From positions 1-64,000 of IMG/VR virus record IMGVR_UViG_3300047095_000752: DNA of 64,000 bases. One strand, given 5' to 3'. A program made the translations under genes and the position numbers. The notes under the pieces were generated by a model that ran no database searches, had not been told where the DNA came from, and was given only the letters and a program-made list of their open reading frames with translations. Position 1 is the first letter of the stretch. Each line of letters opens with the position of its first letter. Below, piece by piece: positions 1,660 to 13,973 of this stretch.

Positions 1660-1936
1660 CGTTCACCTTTGTAAACCATATACATTTTACCGTATACTTT
1701 GATGACCGAAGTCGGTCGACTATAAATTCAATTTTACGCCCAACATTATTTCCAAGTTCATCAGAAATGTCCGTTGTATAAAATAAATAAAATAAAGTCT
1801 TCGCAAATTTTAGAATTAATTGTTCAAGACTACAACATAGTTCGTATATAATAACACTGAGTTTATAATTACACTGCGTCATAACTTGTTTTAAACCATA
1901 TACCATCAAAATTTTCGTTATAAGTAGGTATTTCAA
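1652..1936 (-). CDS. Small hypothetical protein (true start probably near 1882)
   Basis: ORF in an overlapping chain; the internal Met in MTQCNYK lies near the stop of the upstream gene. Confidence 0.45.
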   Translation of the reverse strand: MKYLLITKILMVYGLKQVMTQCNYKLSVIIYELCCSLEQLILKFAKTLFYLFYTTDISDELGNNVGRKIEFIVDRLRSSKYTVKCIWFTKVNDG

Positions 1937-3101
1937 TTCTTTTCATAATCTTGAATGTTTCTTCACCTACCGTGTGATCGGTTCGATTACGGTCGTTGAG
2001 TTTACACGTATCTTCATTTAAAATTATAAATGTACATCCTATAGTTACATCTCGATATCTATTCTTCAAATAATTTAAAATGACTCTTCTATTATCTTTT
2101 TTAAGGTTAGTATTACAAACTGCTATTTTATTCCTAAACCCATTTATACTTATTTCGTTATTTATATCTTCAATTAGTAATTGCTCTAATGGTGTATTTT
2201 TCGACAGGCAGTACTCAAATGCTTGTTTGGCGACCTCTTTAGGGTCGTTGAGTATAACTCTTGAGTTTAAATCTGATGATAAATTGTCTTTGAATACTCG
2301 CTCCCGAATTATATCGAATGAAAATATTTTACGGTCAGCCTGAGTTGCTCGGAAATCCTTACCAGATCCGGGTAGACCACAGTAGAACATGATATCTACA
2401 TCGTCCGACGTCAGATTACTTTTAGTATATTTACGTCCGGTGAAATTTATATTAACAACATGTTTAGATTTATGGGAATCGGAGTCTTTGGAAGCTACAC
2501 TTCCCAACTCATCAATTTCTTTGAATAATTTGAATTTATTGTATAGGGAACTCTCATACCTAACCATCTTAGCCAACTTATCGGGTATATTAATTAGATC
2601 GTAGAACACCATATGATTTGACACTAAATCACAAACGTCAACTATAATAGAAGATTGTTTATCGGTATCAACACAGAATTCAGCCAACACATCATACACA
2701 ACATTTGAGGCGTGTTTTGTACTCATAAATGCATGGTTATAGAATGTAACTTTATTATCATCTTTTATTTTTCTGGTAAATACTTTTCCGTAATCGTGAG
2801 TTAAAATTGCAACAGTCATTGTCATCAAATCTTCAACGGATTCAATCTTGATTGTGTTATAACTAAGGTATGCTTTATACGCCCCTAGCATGGCGGTGAC
2901 ATGTGCCCATACATCACCCTCACCGTGCCATGGGTTGTGGTTCACTATAGTTTGACCATCGTATAAATGATGTGAAGTGACTCTCATTTCTTGAACTTCG
3001 GATTCATATTTTTTGCAATAAAAAGAAATTATTTTATTCATATATTTTATGTTTTGTGCGTTTGATGTTGCCACGAAAAACTCCTTAAAGGTTGGATACA
3101 C
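1869..3101 (-). CDS. HD-Pnk-like RNA end-healing enzyme (HD phosphoesterase plus P-loop kinase)
   Basis: HGEGDVWAH...HDYGK...H...HM HD motifs, followed by Walker A GLPGSGKD, a SFDIIR motif and an NTN..K..R kinase-type motif. Confidence 0.8.
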   Translation of the reverse strand: MYPTFKEFFVATSNAQNIKYMNKIISFYCKKYESEVQEMRVTSHHLYDGQTIVNHNPWHGEGDVWAHVTAMLGAYKAYLSYNTIKIESVEDLMTMTVAILTHDYGKVFTRKIKDDNKVTFYNHAFMSTKHASNVVYDVLAEFCVDTDKQSSIIVDVCDLVSNHMVFYDLINIPDKLAKMVRYESSLYNKFKLFKEIDELGSVASKDSDSHKSKHVVNINFTGRKYTKSNLTSDDVDIMFYCGLPGSGKDFRATQADRKIFSFDIIRERVFKDNLSSDLNSRVILNDPKEVAKQAFEYCLSKNTPLEQLLIEDINNEISINGFRNKIAVCNTNLKKDNRRVILNYLKNRYRDVTIGCTFIILNEDTCKLNDRNRTDHTVGEETFKIMKRIEIPTYNENFDGIWFKTSYDAV

Positions 3102-3119
3102 TATTCAATATATATAATG

Positions 3120-4433
3120 CTAATGAGATTCCGTTTGTTCACCAGATCGAATTATGTAAAATACTGATATCAATTTAAATATTTTTCGCATCAAATGTGT
3201 CTTATTGGTTACTGGATCTATATGTTCATATAAGTCATTTTCCAAAGAGCGAACCACAATTCCTTCCCGACCTTTGAATTGATTCTTGTTCAACATACTA
3301 TGGTGCACTAAGGTGGTCGGACCATCTACATATTCTTCAAGGACACCTTCGTAGTACGGACCTTTATATAGACACTTCACACATGGTAAATTAAATGCTT
3401 TTGTATACGATTCTAATATATCGATGTGTTGATATTTACCATTAATTGTAATATCGAAGAATTTATATTCTTTAGCTGTACAACCATAATTCATATCTTG
3501 AACGCCGTTACCATATATTTCACCATATAGAACAATGTCATCACCCCCAGATCCGCCATGTCCCTGTGATATAGATTCTGCGAATCCCCTATTATTATTC
3601 CTAAGATTATACAATAGATCTTTAACTCGTGAATCTAATATCGGTAGTAAATATAGATCGACGTATGGTGTTTCGGCTATGTTAAAAATAGTATTGAAAT
3701 AGGGCACATTATTATATAGAGAATTTATAATTTTACTTTTCCAGCAGTTATTAAATATATTGGTATGGTATTTGAATAAGGTTTTCTTTTTAAATTTTAC
3801 ACTGAATTCTCTAACAATCTTTAACTGAGTGGTATGACTTCCTGCAACAAATTCAAATTTACCTTTAGGGTTCTTAACATACCCCGCCCGGAAGTTTGTA
3901 CCGTGTATTTTCTCAGTTATATAAATCGTTTCACCTCCACTAAAAGCTCCGGGATAATTTCTATAATTTTCAATACCAGTGTAATTCGTGAACGTACCAT
4001 ATTGATTTACGATATACACATTAGAGTCGTACCCAGCAGTTTCATAATTATATGCGTTATAATATTTAGTTTTATCATCACCTACCTTGTCACCGGCTTC
4101 AATGTGTATGGCAAATCCAAAACTGGGTTCCGCCCTTATATTCGCCGCCATTATTCTAACGTGTGTATCAGCCATAACATGCCCCGAAGGGAGTGTCCCA
4201 CAATATTTGGTTATCTCCCATTTATCCGTCCATTCTCTTGGGACTAGACTGTTCGGTGGGAAATATATAATTGGATCATTTACTTTATACTTACCTTTTG
4301 GTACAATTACCCACCACCCATTGATTCGGATCTTCTCTAATAAATCCGCATTTGGGTGTTTTTGTACATCTGATATAGTTTCTACTTTTACAGCAAAAGT
4401 TGACATGAAGTTCCTTTCTTTACCGATATCCAT
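3120..4433 (-). CDS. RNA ligase, DRB0094/Rnl5 family (start probably near 4406)
   Basis: N-terminal HPNADLLE OB-type module, motif I TEKIHGTN, YGEIYG, FFDI, EGIVVR and the C-terminal KIFK. Confidence 0.88.
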   Translation of the reverse strand: MDIGKERNFMSTFAVKVETISDVQKHPNADLLEKIRINGWWVIVPKGKYKVNDPIIYFPPNSLVPREWTDKWEITKYCGTLPSGHVMADTHVRIMAANIRAEPSFGFAIHIEAGDKVGDDKTKYYNAYNYETAGYDSNVYIVNQYGTFTNYTGIENYRNYPGAFSGGETIYITEKIHGTNFRAGYVKNPKGKFEFVAGSHTTQLKIVREFSVKFKKKTLFKYHTNIFNNCWKSKIINSLYNNVPYFNTIFNIAETPYVDLYLLPILDSRVKDLLYNLRNNNRGFAESISQGHGGSGGDDIVLYGEIYGNGVQDMNYGCTAKEYKFFDITINGKYQHIDILESYTKAFNLPCVKCLYKGPYYEGVLEEYVDGPTTLVHHSMLNKNQFKGREGIVVRSLENDLYEHIDPVTNKTHLMRKIFKLISVFYIIRSGEQTESH

Positions 4434-4731
4434 GATTTTGAGTATAAATTTGAGCTACACTTTTCCGGCGAGTATATAACACTTGTGCAATCGGACCTGC
4501 TATATTAGCACTATATGTAACCCCGAGTATTATACTACGAGTGAAATAATTTAATTTTAAAAAACTTAATGTAAATATACGATTTTTATATTTTCGGCGA
4601 CTATTACATCTTGATGTTATACACATATCATTTTTAGATTTTGTTATAACTTTAGACATGAGAAATATTAATTTACGAATTGAACTCAAACATAAGTTTT
4701 TGTCAACCTGCGATAAAATGGATTTATTCAT
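4420..4731 (-). CDS. Small hypothetical protein
   Basis: 103 aa ORF with a GGAG-type RBS upstream. Confidence 0.45.
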   Translation of the reverse strand: MNKSILSQVDKNLCLSSIRKLIFLMSKVITKSKNDMCITSRCNSRRKYKNRIFTLSFLKLNYFTRSIILGVTYSANIAGPIAQVLYTRRKSVAQIYTQNHGYR

Positions 4732-4742
4732 GAGTTCTCCTA

Positions 4743-4774
4743 TGGGCGCGGATCTAATATTGATCCGCGCCCAT
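4743..4774. terminator. GC-rich hairpin after the Hen1-ligase gene
   Basis: Inverted repeat atgggcgcggatc-taatatt-gatccgcgcccat. Confidence 0.5.
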
Positions 4775-4783
4775 CTATTTATA

Positions 4784-6988
4784 TTACAACGTTTTATCGA
4801 CTACACCAACAGAACTCATTCCGAGAAATGCAGCCACATACTTGAGTCTAGTCTCATGCCGATTATTCAAGAATGCATCTAATATTATTTTAGAGCATTC
4901 AAATTCTTGAATAGCAAGTCCACGCTTTTTAGCGACTTGGCGATGTGTTATATTTTTGAAATATTCTTCATTTTCATATAGAGGGAGTCCGTAAGTCAAA
5001 TTTAAATACTTATGTCCCCGGACTTTAAGAGCGGGTTGGATATAATATCCGGATGGTAATACACTTGAAAAATTATTCAATGGTTTATATACAAACCCTT
5101 CGAGTAAAGGTAGATCTGGATATGTATTGAAGGTAAGAGTTTCAGAAGGAGAACTACCGCAACGAGAGAGCCAGTCCAGTGTATTGTTTGCCATATCGTG
5201 TTCATCCGTTATAACGGTATATTTGCATGGCTTTAGTATTTTACAATCATCTGATATGATATCTATGTATTTCATCATATCCAAATTAGACATTGTATAA
5301 CCGTGTATAAGAGATCTTTTATGCTTGGTACCGATAGCAAGTACATGAAATGGTCGAATTTCAATATCAGTTTCTTTAGTAAATTCGTTGAGTGTATTCA
5401 ACACGGTCTCAACATACGCCGTATCCTTACCAGAATGTATATTGGATAGATATTGGGATTCGATTGCTGCGTAGAATTGCTCGTTAAGCATTGTTTTTGC
5501 AGCGTACGACCAAGGTAGAAGCTCAGCATCCAGAATAATAAAGGACACTTCCATCCCGATTTTTTCTTCAAGGGCGCTTATATTTTTTGATATTTCTGAA
5601 TGTAGGACGAGCTTTATATTTTGTTCATCTTCATTCTTGAAAAATTCAAATCCACCACGAGAATTTATTATAAGGGTTTTATCGTACCCTTTTTCTTGAG
5701 CAGCTTCAAAATTCTTAAACCACAATATTTGAGTTCGAGAACCCATATACTTAGTCTGTTGAATTAATTTAGTTACGCCACGCTCTCTGTAGTATTTAAA
5801 CGCACCCAGAGGATGTTCAATATAAGAGTCGAATTGTCCGTATAAAGTTCTATAATAGTCGAGTTTATTTTCTGGAAGTAGATGCTCCTTAAGAGTCTCA
5901 ACCGGAGACACTGTAGGTGCCATGTAAAATATATTCTTCGAGTTACTTATGAATGCACGTGACGTATACCCACGCCCAATTTCCTTCTGAGATACAGAGT
6001 AATCAGACACAGGGAGGTATATGTTACCTTGCATTTTATTCAAATTTTTAAGAGATTTAAAGTCGATCTGTCGTTCAATTTTATTTTTTCGAGGTTTTCT
6101 ATAATCGGTTGTGTCAAGAGTCCATTCGAGAATTCGCTCAGGACTCCATTCGGTTGGATCAACTTGTATTGAAAATATCCTATCTTCAACTTCACCTTCT
6201 TTTGGCGGATATGGTTTTGATATTGTTATCTTGTTATCTATAAGAGATTTATGTGTAGCGAATATACAGAAGGAGGGCTGCATATTCTCAAATTCTTCAG
6301 TCGGTTCTATTATATCAATATATTCAATATTGTATAAGTCGGATAGATAACTAACCACTTCGCGGCTAAATTGGTCTTTTGTGTATTCGACGCAATGGTC
6401 TCGCCGACGGAGGCTACCCGGCTCTATCGAATAGAATTTATTGAATTCAATATTAGGGGTAGTTAGATATAAATACTTCGGTACAAATATGTTTTTAATT
6501 AAATCTAAAATTTTAATACGATCACCATATTCAAAGTGCTCAATAGCTTCCACACAAGTCAATAGATCGGGGAGACAATCGCTTATAGTTATATTTGGGT
6601 ATAGTATATTACTTTCAATTACACGAACTTTATCAGTTGTTTTTATCTTTTTTATTTTATAAAAATCCTTTTCAATTCCAAGGATTCTAAGTTTCGGATG
6701 TTCTTTTACCAACATCTCCAACAGTTTACCTTCGGAAGTACACAGGTCCACCATGTACTCAATTTCAGGCATATCATTGAGTTTATTACATATCAATTCA
6801 TGTCTTTTCTGATGTAACGATATCTTCTTATCAACCAGTTCAGCTACAGATACTGGTGGGGTATATCCAAATTCTTGCTTAAATTTTTGCTTTAATGTTT
6901 TGTTATCTTGACAGAATTTGTTCATAATCATAGAGAAGTTTTTAGAATATCTTCTAACCGTAGTTGAATCGTTATCCGACATCTTCAT
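4784..6988 (-). CDS. Fusion of Hen1 RNA 2'-O-methyltransferase domain and Pnkp adenylyltransferase (RNA ligase) domain
   Basis: Hen1 MTase motifs DLCTSEG, VEAIEH, TTPNIEFN and RRDHCVEYT. Pnkp-ligase motifs YMAPTVSP, IEHP..AF.YY, KYMGSR, LDAELLPW, EGFVYKP, QPALKVRG..YL..TYG, KR.LA..EF and terminal DKTL. Confidence 0.85.
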   Translation of the reverse strand: MKMSDNDSTTVRRYSKNFSMIMNKFCQDNKTLKQKFKQEFGYTPPVSVAELVDKKISLHQKRHELICNKLNDMPEIEYMVDLCTSEGKLLEMLVKEHPKLRILGIEKDFYKIKKIKTTDKVRVIESNILYPNITISDCLPDLLTCVEAIEHFEYGDRIKILDLIKNIFVPKYLYLTTPNIEFNKFYSIEPGSLRRRDHCVEYTKDQFSREVVSYLSDLYNIEYIDIIEPTEEFENMQPSFCIFATHKSLIDNKITISKPYPPKEGEVEDRIFSIQVDPTEWSPERILEWTLDTTDYRKPRKNKIERQIDFKSLKNLNKMQGNIYLPVSDYSVSQKEIGRGYTSRAFISNSKNIFYMAPTVSPVETLKEHLLPENKLDYYRTLYGQFDSYIEHPLGAFKYYRERGVTKLIQQTKYMGSRTQILWFKNFEAAQEKGYDKTLIINSRGGFEFFKNEDEQNIKLVLHSEISKNISALEEKIGMEVSFIILDAELLPWSYAAKTMLNEQFYAAIESQYLSNIHSGKDTAYVETVLNTLNEFTKETDIEIRPFHVLAIGTKHKRSLIHGYTMSNLDMMKYIDIISDDCKILKPCKYTVITDEHDMANNTLDWLSRCGSSPSETLTFNTYPDLPLLEGFVYKPLNNFSSVLPSGYYIQPALKVRGHKYLNLTYGLPLYENEEYFKNITHRQVAKKRGLAIQEFECSKIILDAFLNNRHETRLKYVAAFLGMSSVGVVDKTL

Positions 6989-7610
6989 TTCCTTCGTCGA
7001 GCCAAGTTTTAGAGATTGTAATTAATTTATCAACAAATGCTTCATGTGCTGTATATATTCCACCGCGCCGGATAGTCAAAAATAACGATAATACATATGC
7101 CTTCTGTATGAATTCCGATGTCGTCATAGCTTCTTTTGGATTTAATTTCAACATAAAGCACGAACGCATTTCAATCGTCGATTCAACACTTGATGCATTA
7201 ATGTTGTAATCATCAAATAGCTTTACCGAGAATTCTAAGTCGTTCACAATCGGACCAATTATTATTTCTTGATTTTGCGTTTTTTGAAAAAATTGTTCGT
7301 CGGTTATATCACCTTTCGGTGGTCGTCCCGCGATGCAAGACCGTAGGGTTTCCCATAGTGCTTTTAGATGATACGGACATGCTGCAGCAACTTCTGAATT
7401 CAAATAGAAATCTAAATTCAATTGTCGTGCAACTTTTAAGAATTGCATATCATCTAATTCGGTTTTAATTTCATATTGCGTATCTACCCCGTTGACGAAT
7501 TGACCCGTGAATTTAAGTCCACGCAGGTCCTGTTCAAATGGGGGAGAATTTGGATTCTTAACTAATATATAAGATAAATGTGGTATATCACTTTTTATTG
7601 AAAAATACAT
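6972..7610 (-). CDS. Hen1 N-terminal (ligase-activating, Hen1_L-like) domain
   Basis: LSYILVKNP resembles DLGYLLHKHP; AYVL...VDKL....WL matches the end of the Hen1 N-domain; it lies directly upstream of the Hen1 MTase. Confidence 0.72.
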   Translation of the reverse strand: MYFSIKSDIPHLSYILVKNPNSPPFEQDLRGLKFTGQFVNGVDTQYEIKTELDDMQFLKVARQLNLDFYLNSEVAAACPYHLKALWETLRSCIAGRPPKGDITDEQFFQKTQNQEIIIGPIVNDLEFSVKLFDDYNINASSVESTIEMRSCFMLKLNPKEAMTTSEFIQKAYVLSLFLTIRRGGIYTAHEAFVDKLITISKTWLDEGNEDVG

Positions 7611-7611
7611 A

Positions 7612-9603
7612 TCAACCCTTTCCTATTCGTTCCAAAAATTCATCTTCAGATATAATTGTAATACCCTTAGATGCGGCTTTGGCTAACTTTGCCCCGGCAT
7701 TCTCACCGACTACAAGAAGAGTAGTCTTTGACGTTACCGATTTATCAACTTTACCACCGTTCTCCAAAATGAGTTCGTGGATACGGGGGCGGGGAGTGAA
7801 CAAGACCCCTGTCACACAAACCAGTTCACCAGCGAAGGCGTCCGATTTTGCTACAGTATTCATAGTCTCATTTTCATCAACTTTCATGTTAAATCCATAA
7901 GATACAAGATCTAATATAAGCTTTTCATTTTTATATTCTCTAAACCAATTATAAATACTATTTGCAACAACATCACCAATTCCATCTATAGACTTTAAAT
8001 CTTCTACTTTCTGAGATCTTAATGTTTGAATATCCTTGAATGTATTTGCAAGAAGAGAAGATGTTGTTTTACCAGTATTGGGAATTTGTAACCCAGCTAA
8101 TACTTTTTCAAATGGCATATTTTTTGATTTTTGAATGCTATTATATATATTTTTAGAAGACTTTTCAGCCATACCGTCGAGTTGGCAAATATCATCCGGT
8201 GTCATATCATATAGATCTATTATGTTATGAATCATATTTGCATCATACATTTTATCAACTATAGCGTCACCAAGACCATCAATGTCCATCACATCTTTGG
8301 ATGCCCAGTATAACACTTTACCTACGATTTTTCCAAGACAATCTGGATTCTGACATATAAGAGCTACATTATCATTATCATTAGCAACATCAAAACAACA
8401 TACCGGACATAATTCTGGTCGTTCAAATTTTTCCAAATTTTTCCCAATACGATTTTCCATGTTAACATATAATATCTGAGGGATAATTTCACCGGCTTTT
8501 TTAATACCGACAATATCTCCGATTCTTATATCCAGTTTCTCTACTTGATCAAAATTGTGGAGAGAAGCCTTAGCTACAACGGATCCACATATCTCAACAG
8601 GTTCAAGTATAGCTACCGGAGTCAGTGCGCCGGACTTACCAACCTGAACATCTATGTTCAATACTTTAGTTTCTTCAATTTCTTCTGCATATTTATAAGC
8701 GACTAACCATTTCGGGTGACTTGATGTATCTTTGAATTTAGAGCGACTTGCTATATCATTTATCTTAACGACAACACCATCAACCGGGTACGGAAGTGTA
8801 GTTTTATTTGCACCAAATTTATCAATAACAGATTTTAAGTTATCACCACCATTTACAATTTCATACTCGGGAGTCTTAAACCCAAGATCTTTTATTGTGC
8901 TTAATACTTGAAATTGATTTGTTAAGCCATGTTGTAACGGATCAACGATATCATATGCTATCATTGATAATTTACTTTGTTTCGATATTTTTGAATCTTT
9001 TCTTTTCAATGCTCCGGCGGCTGCATTTCTTGGATTTGCTAATAATTGTTCACCATTCAATTTTTTGTTACGATTTAATCCTTCAAATACTTTAAATGAC
9101 ATATATACTTCACCACGAATTTCAACGATATTATTCATACTATTAGGAATACTTAATGGAACTCCATTAATAACTTTTACATTTTCAATAACATTTTCAC
9201 CGATAGTTCCATTACCCCGAGTGAGAGCTTTAGTCAAAATTGAATTTTCATATATCAATGATATAGCCAACCCATCGATTTTATACTCAACCGAATATTC
9301 ATCTGATACTAATTTTGATTTTTTAGTAAATGAGTCCAATTCTTTAACCGAATATACCTTTTCTATACTCATCATCTTTTTAGAATGTTTTATTTTTTCG
9401 AATTCACTTACAGGGTCAGAGCCAATTCGTTGGGATGGAGAATCTGATATATAAGCACTGGGGTTATTTCTCTCATATTCAAGTAATTGATTGAACTTTT
9501 TATCATATTCTTCATCTGATATAATTGGATTAGAATCGTTATAGTATAAACAACTGTGTTTGTTCAACTCACTCTTAAGACTGCAGTACTCTTGGTTTGT
9601 CAT
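7612..9603 (-). CDS. ligA: NAD-dependent DNA ligase
   Basis: YY..SNP.ISDEEYD, KIDG adenylation motif, TRGNG, EIRGE, NPRNAAAG, C4 zinc finger, HhH repeats and BRCT domain. Start moved to MTNQEY at 9603. Confidence 0.96.
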   Translation of the reverse strand: MTNQEYCSLKSELNKHSCLYYNDSNPIISDEEYDKKFNQLLEYERNNPSAYISDSPSQRIGSDPVSEFEKIKHSKKMMSIEKVYSVKELDSFTKKSKLVSDEYSVEYKIDGLAISLIYENSILTKALTRGNGTIGENVIENVKVINGVPLSIPNSMNNIVEIRGEVYMSFKVFEGLNRNKKLNGEQLLANPRNAAAGALKRKDSKISKQSKLSMIAYDIVDPLQHGLTNQFQVLSTIKDLGFKTPEYEIVNGGDNLKSVIDKFGANKTTLPYPVDGVVVKINDIASRSKFKDTSSHPKWLVAYKYAEEIEETKVLNIDVQVGKSGALTPVAILEPVEICGSVVAKASLHNFDQVEKLDIRIGDIVGIKKAGEIIPQILYVNMENRIGKNLEKFERPELCPVCCFDVANDNDNVALICQNPDCLGKIVGKVLYWASKDVMDIDGLGDAIVDKMYDANMIHNIIDLYDMTPDDICQLDGMAEKSSKNIYNSIQKSKNMPFEKVLAGLQIPNTGKTTSSLLANTFKDIQTLRSQKVEDLKSIDGIGDVVANSIYNWFREYKNEKLILDLVSYGFNMKVDENETMNTVAKSDAFAGELVCVTGVLFTPRPRIHELILENGGKVDKSVTSKTTLLVVGENAGAKLAKAASKGITIISEDEFLERIGKG

Positions 9604-9626
9604 ACATTTTTTCCTTAAAAAAATAA

Positions 9627-9660
9627 GGAGGGAGTAATAGCAAAATGCTATCACTCCCTC
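9627..9660 (-). terminator. Hairpin terminator downstream of the GC-rich gene
   Basis: gagggagtaatagca-aaa-tgctatcactccctc with an A-run on its left (U-tract on the minus strand). Confidence 0.55.
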
Positions 9661-13860: not shown

Positions 13861-13864
13861 TTCT

Positions 13865-13937
13865 TGAGAATGACTGGATTTGAACCAGCGACACGACGAT
13901 GACTTTCGTCTGCTCTACCAGACTGAGCTACAATCTC
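13865..13937 (-). ncRNA. tRNA-like element with an aberrant 6-nt anticodon loop
   Basis: GAGATTG TA GCTC..GAGC A GACGA-AAGTCA-TCGTC GTGTC GCTGG TTCAAAT CCAGT CATTCTC. Confidence 0.65.
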
Positions 13938-13973
13938 AATAGTTTTAATAGAGAATTAACTCTATGTTTTTGA

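What the first reader, a model, noticed from the sequence alone, without database searches (positions are those of the whole stretch)
1869..7610. Rewired phage RNA repair-and-immunise system: Hen1-MTase fused to Pnkp-ligase, separate Hen1-N, HD-Pnk and Rnl5
Established: in the bacterial Pnkp-Hen1 system, Pnkp is kinase-phosphatase-ligase and Hen1 is ligase activator plus 2'-O-methyltransferase. Seen: the methyltransferase is fused N-terminally to the Pnkp ligase module, no Pnkp kinase/metallophosphatase modules are present in the window, and the Hen1 N-domain is a separate ORF. An HD plus P-loop kinase protein and a DRB0094/Rnl5 ligase (families that co-occur in a Deinococcus radiodurans repair operon) lie just downstream. 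Inference: HD-Pnk supplies end healing for two alternative ligases, and one of them methylates the junction so repaired tRNA resists re-cleavage by host anticodon nucleases.
Basis: partly seen in the sequence, partly recalled or inferred. Interest (0 to 1): 0.85.

Follow-up and report, generated by a model that had tools for sequence, protein, structure and literature searches.

The report
Phage RNA repair island, Hen1-ligase type
A giant phage carries a gene cluster predicted to mend cut RNA and methylate the mended spot against re-cutting; the parts are known but joined in a way not yet described, which many uncultured phages share.

Summary
On the minus strand lie a free-standing Hen1 N-terminal (ligase-activating) domain (6972-7610), a 734-aa Hen1 methyltransferase fused to a Pnkp-type ligase (4784-6988), an Rnl5/DRB0094-type ligase (3120-4406) and an HD phosphoesterase plus polynucleotide 5'-kinase (1869-3101).

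No Pnkp-type or T4-type kinase-phosphatase is in the window.

The arrangement is not a one-off. The 734-aa protein sits inside a large, unnamed, mostly metagenomic family of single-chain Hen1_N-methyltransferase-ligase proteins (830-950 aa). About 80 of the best 150 representative hits have that build. In the window's lineage the Hen1_N domain has split off secondarily. The split, with a 14-17 nt gene overlap, is kept in two relatives (92% and 73% identity).

An HD-kinase lies within 3.3 kb of the fusion in 7 of 15 independent lineages, so it is the likely end-healing partner. It belongs to the family of the characterised phage RM378 polynucleotide kinase. The Rnl5 ligase is linked in only 3 lineages.

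Best reading: a third wiring of the Hen1 repair-and-methylate system, after Pnkp-Hen1 and Pnkp1-Rnl-Hen1. No activity has been tested. Verdict: new variant of a known kind, moderate interest.

The parts
6972..7610 (-). Free-standing Hen1 N-terminal (ligase-activating) domain, 212 aa. Its last 17 nt overlap the start of the next gene.
   Evidence: Pfam Hen1_N E 8e-8. Profile hit to 4dqz/4drf/4e6n only. The AF2 model matches Hen1-N structures only, TM 0.74. It is homologous to residues 1-208 of full-length fusions, E 1e-44.
4784..6988 (-). 734-aa fusion of a Hen1 2'-O-methyltransferase domain and a Pnkp-type RNA ligase domain.
   Evidence: Close relatives P0001 (92% identity) and P0151 (73%) have the same build.
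6284..6853 (-). Hen1 methyltransferase domain (aa 46-235). The metal site E147, E150, H151, H198 is kept. Motif I reads DLCTSEGK.
   Evidence: TIGR04074 E 5e-18. 3jwh/3jwg E 5e-13 with the ExxEH and RRDH..EYT motifs aligned. Invariant columns in the 33-sequence alignment A1.
4787..5953 (-). Pnkp-type ligase domain (aa 346-734). Nucleotidyltransferase motifs: I K413-Y-M-G, Ia R444/G446, III D487/E489, IV E630-G-x-V-x-K635, V K655-x-R657.
   Evidence: PNKP_ligase E 8e-42. 3ty8/4drf E 2e-23. Invariant columns in A1.
4742..4774 (-). 13-bp G+C-rich hairpin just after the fusion's stop codon. No U tract follows it on the coding strand.
   Evidence: The stem is kept through compensatory changes in L023 and L024.
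4420..4731 (-). Small basic ORF (103 aa) with a hydrophobic stretch and a conserved Shine-Dalgarno site plus ATG. Function unknown.
   Evidence: Present in L023 and L024 at 38-40% aa identity. No family match.
3120..4406 (-). Rnl5/DRB0094-type RNA ligase (428 aa from the second ATG): N-terminal OB fold plus nucleotidyltransferase. It carries a clade-specific insert of about 70 aa between motifs I and III.
   Evidence: Motifs EKIHGTN, GEIYG, REGIVVR and K..K are kept.
1869..3101 (-). HD phosphoesterase plus polynucleotide 5'-kinase (HD-Pnk type), 410 aa. HD domain about 2502-2939; kinase about 1887-2396.
   Evidence: Motifs. Pfam HD and AAA_33 in homologues. Model matches C. thermocellum Pnk, mammalian PNKP and fungal Trl1 kinase. 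The family profile hits RM378 PNK at E 1e-38.
7612..9654 (-). NAD-dependent DNA ligase LigA, directly upstream and probably co-transcribed. Context; a role in the system is unproven.
   Evidence: Pfam and PHROG. The same position is kept in L023, L024 and L046. A terminator-like hairpin at 9660-9628 precedes it.

Best explanation
This is a phage-borne RNA break repair island of the Hen1 'repair and methylate' kind, wired in a third way.

Inferred pathway: a host or competitor ribonuclease cuts a tRNA or another RNA, leaving 2',3'-cyclic phosphate and 5'-OH ends. The HD domain of the 410-aa protein removes the cyclic phosphate and its kinase domain phosphorylates the 5' end. The Hen1 methyltransferase domain of the 734-aa protein methylates the 2'-OH of the 3'-terminal nucleoside. 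The attached Pnkp-type ligase domain, switched on by the separately made Hen1-N protein, then seals the break. The 2'-O-methyl junction can no longer be cut by a transesterifying nuclease.

Shown here: the identity and motif completeness of every domain; membership of a large single-chain Hen1_N-methyltransferase-ligase family; secondary fission of Hen1_N in this lineage; and recurrent genomic linkage of that family to HD-kinase genes.

Inferred from the characterised Pnkp-Hen1 and Pnkp1-Rnl-Hen1 systems, RM378 PNK and Runella HD-Pnk: every enzymatic step, the substrate and the protective effect.

The Rnl5 ligase probably gives a second, non-methylating sealing route, or serves duplex nicks. 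Its link to the rest is weaker.
For: - Domain identities.
- Catalytic residues are kept in all four enzymes.
- 80 of the best 150 representative-library hits with a long ligase match carry Hen1_N, methyltransferase and ligase in one chain.
- In a ligase-domain tree the window clade is nested among full fusions (sister to P0002, local support 99).
- The split, with an internal Shine-Dalgarno site and ATG, is kept at 73% and 92% identity.
- An HD-kinase lies within 0.3-3.3 kb of the fusion in 7 of 15 lineages defined at under 70% identity with usable flanks. None of these has a Pnkp-type kinase-phosphatase.
- HD-kinase is otherwise rare: 7 of 50,697 GenBank phage records.
- The whole array LigA - Hen1 parts - Rnl5 - HD-kinase is syntenic in L046, where the fusion is unsplit.
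- A separate fusion, Hen1 joined to a T4-type kinase-phosphatase beside a stand-alone Pnkp-type ligase in Vibrio phage RYC, shows that these three functions travel together in phages.
- Published biochemistry: Pnkp1-Rnl-Hen1 (PMC4411300) and the HD-domain 3'-phosphatase of RM378 PNK (cited in PMC1997131).
- tRNA-related neighbours: six tRNA genes at 13.5-16.9 kb and a Thg1-like gene inside the island of L046.
Against: - No activity was measured.
- In 8 of 15 lineages no HD-kinase lies within about 8 kb of the fusion, so the partnership is not obligatory.
- The methyltransferase motif I lacks two of the usual glycines (DLCTSEGK against DLGCGEGK). It is conserved in the clade, but SAM binding is unproven.
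- The kinase P-loop ends in Asp rather than Ser/Thr (GSGKD).
- A conserved hairpin and a small ORF separate the Hen1 genes from Rnl5 and the HD-kinase in the window, which suggests two expression units.
- Only 64 of the 245 kb of this genome could be read directly.
- Deinococcus Rnl and HD-Pnk are linked to DNA damage recovery, not tRNA repair.
Confidence: 0.62

Rival explanations
1. There are two independent cassettes. Rnl5 plus HD-kinase is a self-contained heal-and-seal pair, like T4 Pnkp plus Rnl or the Runella ligase-HD-Pnk pair. The Hen1-N and methyltransferase-ligase pair works with some other healing enzyme, from the host or elsewhere in the phage.
For: A conserved hairpin and a small ORF separate the two pairs. 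Rnl5 and the HD-kinase are 18 nt apart. A ligase gene immediately upstream of HD-Pnk is the known Runella arrangement (PMC6097658). Eight fusion lineages have no HD-kinase nearby.
Against: In L002/L048, L004, L028, L007 and L009 the HD-kinase sits next to the Hen1-ligase fusion with no Rnl5 present. The HD-kinase therefore tracks the Hen1-ligase more often than it tracks Rnl5.
Confidence: 0.2
2. The island serves nucleic-acid nick repair during replication or after damage, for example ribonucleotide-terminated nicks in phage DNA or RNA-DNA hybrids, rather than defence against tRNA-cutting nucleases.
For: An NAD-dependent DNA ligase is directly upstream in four related phages, and an ATP-dependent DNA ligase is upstream of the fusion in L012. 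Rnl5 enzymes seal duplex nicks with an RNA 3'-OH strand (established for DraRnl and NgrRnl; my own knowledge). Deinococcus Rnl and HD-Pnk mutants are radiation sensitive (PMC6300522).
Against: In every characterised case the Hen1 methyltransferase and the Hen1-N-dependent Pnkp-type ligase act on RNA ends (PMC4411300). The tRNA genes, the Thg1-like gene, and the RlaP and RtcB genes near related fusions point to RNA.
Confidence: 0.1
3. The methyltransferase domain is degenerate, so the protein is only a Hen1-N-dependent ligase and gives no protection from re-cutting.
For: Motif I is DLCTSEGK, with two of three glycines replaced. No Pfam methyltransferase model reaches E 0.01 on the window protein.
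Against: The variant motif is conserved across the clade down to 44% identity. The Hen1-specific metal ligands E147, E150, H151 and H198 are invariant in 33 sequences. The domain aligns over its full length with solved Hen1 methyltransferases.
Confidence: 0.08

Closest known systems
[quoted passage not shown]
   Same: It has the same ligase family. The window ligase is closer to CthPnkp ligase (E 2e-23) than to Capnocytophaga Rnl (E 0.007). It also has the same Hen1 N-domain fold and the same Hen1 methyltransferase with its metal site, and the genes are adjacent.
   Different: There is no kinase-metallophosphatase module. The ligase is joined to the methyltransferase rather than to the healing modules. 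Hen1-N is a separate protein. End healing is presumably done by an HD-kinase.
Pnkp1-Rnl-Hen1 heterohexamer (Capnocytophaga gingivalis; PMC4411300)
   Same: The ligase is detached from the healing enzyme, and the healing enzyme belongs to a different superfamily from that of Pnkp. The Hen1-N model also matches CgiHen1 (4xrp).
   Different: The healing enzyme is an HD-kinase, not a T4-like kinase-HAD phosphatase. The ligase is fused to the methyltransferase. The three-protein split falls in a different place.
HD-Pnk end-healing enzymes (phage RM378 PNK, Runella slithyformis HD-Pnk, Deinococcus DR_B0098)
   Same: N-terminal HD domain plus C-terminal P-loop polynucleotide kinase with the D-x-x-R signature. 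It is homologous to RM378 PNK (tblastn E 3e-5, profile E 1e-38). A ligase gene lies directly upstream, as in Runella.
   Different: The subfamily is longer (about 400 aa) with a poorly modelled linker of about 40 aa, and it has GSGKD in place of GSGK[ST]. Here it is linked to Hen1 components, which the papers I could read do not report for these enzymes.
Rnl5 ligases (Deinococcus DraRnl/DR_B0094, Naegleria NgrRnl)
   Same: N-terminal OB fold, then a nucleotidyltransferase with motifs I, III, IV and V and no C-terminal domain. NgrRnl is the best PDB match.
   Different: Below the NCBIfam trusted cutoff (82 against 151 bits). There is an insert of about 70 aa between motifs I and III that is absent from the L046 and L014 homologues.
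Vibrio phage RYC VCPH_00184/00185 (cultured phage, unannotated system)
   Same: A phage Hen1-type system in which two of the three functions are fused.
   Different: The fusion partner differs: Hen1 (N-domain plus methyltransferase) is fused to a T4-like kinase-HAD phosphatase, and the Pnkp-type ligase stands alone.

Membership tests
Bacterial Pnkp-Hen1 system | Pnkp polypeptide with kinase, metallophosphoesterase and ligase modules in one chain | tested here: not met
   The 734-aa protein has no kinase or phosphatase part. A profile of 13 Pnkp N-halves finds nothing in the window at E 10.
Bacterial Pnkp-Hen1 system | [quoted passage not shown] | tested here: not met
   Hen1_N is ORF 6972-7610. 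The methyltransferase is the N-terminus of ORF 4784-6988, in another frame. No conserved slippery site was found.
Bacterial Pnkp-Hen1 system | Pnkp-type adenylyltransferase/ligase domain with motif I lysine and motifs Ia, III, IV and V | tested here: met
   PNKP_ligase E 8e-42. K413, R444, E489, E630, K635, K655 and R657 are invariant in A1.
Bacterial Pnkp-Hen1 system | Hen1 methyltransferase with the ExxEH...H metal site and a SAM-binding motif I | tested here: inconclusive
   The metal site is intact (E147, E150, H151, H198). Motif I deviates (DLCTSEGK) but is conserved in the clade.
Bacterial Pnkp-Hen1 system | Ligase sealing activity depends on Hen1-N; 2'-O-methylation occurs before sealing | not testable with these tools
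   This needs purified proteins.
Pnkp1-Rnl-Hen1 system | T4-like Pnkp1 (kinase plus HAD phosphatase) as the healing enzyme | tested here: not met
   T4 PseT finds nothing in the window at E 10. The rest of the genome was not readable.
Pnkp1-Rnl-Hen1 system | Stand-alone Rnl and intact two-domain Hen1 | tested here: not met
   The ligase is fused to the methyltransferase and Hen1-N is separate.
HD-Pnk | N-terminal HD phosphohydrolase motifs H...HD...H...H...D | tested here: met
   H59/H67, H102-D103, H123, H163 and D197 are invariant in 9 sequences. Pfam HD is above cutoff in the L002, RM378 and CP21 homologues.
HD-Pnk | C-terminal P-loop polynucleotide 5'-kinase with a catalytic Asp and Arg (D-x-x-R) | tested here: met
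   G242-x4-GK248 and D263-x-x-R266 are invariant. The best fold matches are CthPnk, mammalian PNKP and the Trl1 kinase. Deviation: Asp follows the P-loop lysine.
HD-Pnk | Homology to an experimentally characterised member | tested here: met
   RM378p110: tblastn E 3e-5 over 81% of the query; family profile E 1.4e-38. Its HD phosphatase activity is cited in PMC1997131.
Rnl5 (DRB0094/NgrRnl) | N-terminal OB domain followed by a nucleotidyltransferase domain, with no C-terminal OB | tested here: met
   PHA02142 OB fold at aa 15-79 and RNA_ligase at aa 169-400. NgrRnl is the best PDB hit.
Rnl5 (DRB0094/NgrRnl) | Score above the NCBIfam equivalog cutoff for RNA_lig_DRB0094 | tested here: not met
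   81.7 bits against a cutoff of 151. It is a divergent relative, not an equivalog.
Single-chain Hen1_N-methyltransferase-ligase fusions (unnamed family found here) | All three domains in one polypeptide of 830-950 aa | tested here: not met
   The window, P0001 and P0151 lack Hen1_N in the same chain. Their closest relatives (P0002 and P0152, 52-53% identity) have it. The window is a fission derivative of this family.

The most novel reading that the evidence does not exclude
Single-chain Hen1-ligase proteins plus an HD-kinase form a third, essentially phage-borne class of 'repair and immunise' RNA repair machines, widespread in uncultured large phages and absent from cultured-phage records. 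In the window's lineage the ligase-activating domain has become a separately translated subunit. This could allow ligase activity to be dosed or gated independently of methylation. A second Rnl5 ligase gives a parallel sealing route.
Probability: 0.45. Interest if true: 0.65.

Novelty: new variant of a known kind. Interest (0 to 1): 0.55.

Why it matters
Hen1-dependent repair is the only known RNA repair that leaves the mended site resistant to the same nuclease. Only two wirings have been characterised, both in bacteria.

A large phage-borne family with a different healing enzyme and a covalent methyltransferase-ligase link suggests that phages commonly use this chemistry against RNA-cutting host defences. 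It also offers a simpler two- or three-protein system for biochemistry and structure work.

The natural split of Hen1-N gives a ready-made test of how that domain activates the ligase.

The work also corrects annotations. HD-kinases in RM378 and Campylobacter phages are labelled poly A polymerase, and the RYC Hen1-Pnkp1 fusion is labelled only polynucleotide kinase.

Tried and rejected
- **Programmed frameshift.** The two frames differ by +1, so a frameshift could join Hen1_N to the methyltransferase-ligase. The overlap sequences of the window, L023 and L024 share no slippery motif. Each has a Shine-Dalgarno site and an ATG inside the end of the Hen1_N ORF. I rejected this in favour of coupled translation of two proteins.
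- **Assembly error as the cause of the split.** Rejected, because the split is kept in independent assemblies at 92% and 73% identity.
- **Canonical Pnkp or T4 PseT in the window.** None was found. A motif scan of IMG/VR for Pnkp-type phosphatases returned 24 contigs, and this contig was not among them. That is weak evidence for the unread 181 kb.
- **RM378p111 as a hidden fusion.** This 890-aa protein lies next to RM378 PNK. It shows no similarity to the fusion family.
- **DNA-level search.** Megablast and tblastn of the fusion against GenBank phages gave no match. With the ligase part alone only RYC and XacN1 matched.
- **Genome scan.** It gave one hit, a Falkowbacteria MAG, but it used a single restrictive pattern, so absence from cellular genomes is not established.
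- **RNA families.** Rfam found only tRNAs, so the 350-nt gap between the fusion and Rnl5 holds no known RNA family.
- **Independent second fission.** In L044 the Hen1_N pieces upstream of the gene look like errors in a 2x-coverage contig, so it was not counted.
- **Literature not held in the library.** Burroughs and Aravind 2016 (NAR 44:8525) and Munir and Shuman 2017 could not be read. I could not check whether the first already lists this architecture.

Full report
**Source.** The window is the first 64 kb of a 245-kb IMG/VR contig, IMGVR_UViG_3300047095_000752. It is AT-rich, carries six tRNA genes and has phage-type neighbours. Close relatives carry tail-sheath genes. It is a large tailed phage with no cultured relative at the DNA level.

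**Observation.** Five consecutive genes lie on the minus strand between 9654 and 1869.
- LigA, an NAD-dependent DNA ligase (7612-9654).
- A 212-aa Hen1 N-terminal domain (6972-7610).
- A 734-aa protein (4784-6988). Residues 46-235 are a Hen1 methyltransferase and residues 346-734 a Pnkp-type ligase.
- After a hairpin and a small ORF, an Rnl5/DRB0094-type ligase (3120-4433, probably starting at 4406).
- A 410-aa HD-plus-kinase protein (1869-3101).

**Evidence for each domain.**
- Hen1_N: Pfam E 8e-8. A 15-sequence profile hits only CthHen1-N in the PDB. A confident model (pLDDT 83) matches only Hen1-N structures, the best being 4e6n_B at TM 0.74.
- Methyltransferase: TIGR04074 E 5e-18. It aligns over its full length to 3jwh/3jwg at E 5e-13.
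- Ligase: PNKP_ligase E 8e-42 and CthPnkp ligase structures at E 2e-23. This is much better than Capnocytophaga Rnl at E 0.007.
- Rnl5: PHA02142 OB fold plus RNA_ligase, TIGR02306 E 4e-23 but below its cutoff, and NgrRnl as best PDB hit.
- HD-kinase: HD motifs and a P-loop followed by D-x-x-R are invariant in nine homologues. The model (pLDDT 73) best matches C. thermocellum Pnk, mammalian PNKP and fungal Trl1 kinase.

No Pnkp-type kinase-phosphatase and no T4 PseT-like protein is in the window.

**The fusion belongs to a large family.** An exhaustive HMMER search of 1.84 billion representatives with the 734-aa protein found 748 proteins at E up to 0.001 and 101 at E up to 1e-30.
- Domain mapping of the best 150 shows that 80 carry Hen1_N, methyltransferase and ligase in one chain of about 830-950 aa.
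- Canonical Pnkp, recognised by its GDxHG phosphatase motif, appears only from rank 111.
- None of the close relatives has a name or an NCBI/UniRef source.
- GenBank phages hold no match to the whole protein. Only two records have any Pnkp-type ligase.
- A restrictive pattern scan of 185,579 species genomes found one Falkowbacteria MAG.

The window protein is therefore one member of a large, unnamed, mainly metagenomic family of Hen1-ligase proteins.

**The split of Hen1_N is secondary and real.**
- In a ligase-domain tree, the window and P0001 are sister to the full-length P0002 (local support 99). They sit inside a clade of full-length fusions.
- The split form recurs in two independent assemblies at 92% and 73% identity. 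The same 14-17 nt overlap is kept, with a Shine-Dalgarno site and an ATG inside the end of the Hen1_N ORF.
- No slippery sequence is shared, so I read this as gene fission with coupled translation, not frameshifting.
- L046 carries the unsplit 906-aa fusion in the same syntenic block: LigA, fusion, Rnl5, HD-kinase, DUF5662, NMNAT-like, NAMPT. It looks like the ancestral state.

**The healing partner.** I grouped the fusion-bearing loci at under 70% identity and kept those with usable flanks. An HD-kinase lies 0.3-3.3 kb from the fusion in 7 of 15 lineages.
- Long subfamily: the window clade, L046, L002/L048, L004, L028.
- Shorter form of about 320 aa: L007 and L009.

None of the 15 has a Pnkp-type kinase-phosphatase nearby. 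HD-kinases are otherwise rare, matching 7 of 50,697 GenBank phage records.

One of those records is Rhodothermus phage RM378 p110. It is annotated as a poly A polymerase, but it is the characterised RM378 polynucleotide kinase with an HD 3'-phosphatase.

This recurrent linkage is the main support for the claim that the HD-kinase heals ends for the Hen1-ligase. The other eight lineages show varied neighbours or nothing relevant: RtcB in L022, RlaP plus an HD-only protein in L047, Thg1 in L045. The link is therefore frequent but not obligatory.

**Rnl5.** An Rnl5-type ligase is next to the fusion only in the window clade, L046 and L014. In the window it is 18 nt upstream of the HD-kinase. A 13-bp hairpin and a small ORF separate it from the fusion. 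The hairpin is kept by compensatory changes in relatives, and the ORF is conserved but fast-evolving. A ligase gene directly upstream of HD-Pnk is also the Runella arrangement. Rnl5 may be a parallel sealing route or may serve duplex nicks. I cannot decide between these.

**Catalytic completeness.**
- Ligase motifs I, Ia, III, IV and V, and the Hen1 metal ligands (E147, E150, H151, H198), are invariant across 33 family members.
- Two deviations are conserved within clades and so probably tolerated. Methyltransferase motif I reads DLCTSEGK instead of DLGCGEGK. The kinase P-loop reads GSGKD.
- Rnl5 keeps motifs I, III, IV and V and has a clade-specific insert.

**Comparison with known systems.** The chemistry expected is that of Pnkp-Hen1 and Pnkp1-Rnl-Hen1 (PMC4411300). 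Membership of either fails on architecture.
- There is no kinase-phosphatase-ligase chain.
- There is no two-domain Hen1.
- There is no T4-like Pnkp1 in the window.

The healing enzyme belongs to a third phosphatase superfamily (HD). Phage Hen1 systems are already known: XacN1 has Pnkp plus Hen1. The loci fetched here show several other wirings.
- Canonical pairs (L015, L020).
- Hen1 plus a kinase-phosphatase plus a separate ligase (L017).
- In the cultured Vibrio phage RYC, Hen1 fused to a T4-type kinase-phosphatase, with a stand-alone ligase.

The window is thus one more permutation in a shuffled module set. That lowers the surprise, but it strengthens the inference that these parts work together.

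**Literature.** I found no paper in the searchable library that describes a Hen1-ligase fusion or its link to HD-Pnk. The 2016 survey by Burroughs and Aravind, the paper most likely to mention it, could not be read.

**Verdict.** This is a new variant of a known kind. It is of moderate interest because it reveals a sizeable, uncharacterised, phage-borne class of Hen1-type repair systems and a natural split of the ligase activator. All enzymatic steps remain inferred.

Noticed in passing
window 13864-13938 (-): A tRNA-Asp(GUC)-like gene. Its anticodon stem GACGA/TCGTC leaves a 6-nt loop, AAGUCA, instead of 7 nt (ARAGORN reports a two-base anticodon). It sits beside tRNA-Asn(GTT). It could be an altered anticodon loop or a pseudo-tRNA.
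   Followed up: partly
window 4742-4774: A 13-bp G+C-rich hairpin right after the methyltransferase-ligase stop codon. Compensatory base changes keep the stem in L023 and L024. No U tract follows on the coding strand.
   Followed up: partly
window 4420-4731 (-): A small basic ORF with a hydrophobic stretch and a conserved Shine-Dalgarno site plus ATG. It is only 38-40% identical to its counterparts, while the flanking genes are 73-92% identical. No family match.
   Followed up: partly
window 1869-3101 (-), aa 242-249: The kinase P-loop ends in Asp (GLPGSGKD), not Ser/Thr, in all six members of this HD-kinase subfamily. The shorter HD-kinases of L007 and L009 have the usual GSGKS/GSGKT.
   Followed up: partly
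L074 (Vibrio phage RYC, AP014858) 5965-9182: A cultured phage encodes a stand-alone Pnkp-type ligase (VCPH_00185). Next to it is a 717-aa protein with Hen1_N, methyltransferase, kinase and HAD phosphatase domains (VCPH_00184), annotated only as polynucleotide kinase. This Hen1-Pnkp1 fusion is undescribed in the papers I could search.
   Followed up: partly
L046 13159-13962; L045 16440-18037; L047 4391-5473; L022 5684-7126: Other RNA-repair-type genes sit near related fusions: a Thg1-like gene between Rnl5 and the HD-kinase (L046), Thg1 plus R2K (L045), RlaP (L047) and RtcB (L022).
   Followed up: no
L023 17808-20348; L024 17399-19484; L046 16354-18514: An NMNAT-like gene (CTP_transf_like) and a NAMPT gene, an NAD+ salvage pair, follow the island in relatives. 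In the window this position falls off the contig end. The adjacent DNA ligase is NAD-dependent.
   Followed up: no
L042 5917-7002 (RM378p110); L043 5923-6945 (CP21_070): The HD-kinases of Rhodothermus phage RM378 and of Campylobacter phages are annotated as poly A polymerase. PHROG 6931, which they resemble, is labelled unknown function.
   Followed up: yes
L010 6132-10106; L033 1510-5160; L006 7923-9182: Further variants of the fusion. L010 has a 1324-aa protein with an unexplained 360-aa N-terminal extension. L033 has a 1216-aa protein with an insert inside Hen1_N. L006 has a stand-alone ligase at least 70% identical to the ligase part of the L026 full fusion.
   Followed up: no
window 9628-9660: A terminator-like hairpin with a T run overlaps the predicted GTG start of LigA at 9654, so the true start is probably further downstream.
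   Followed up: no
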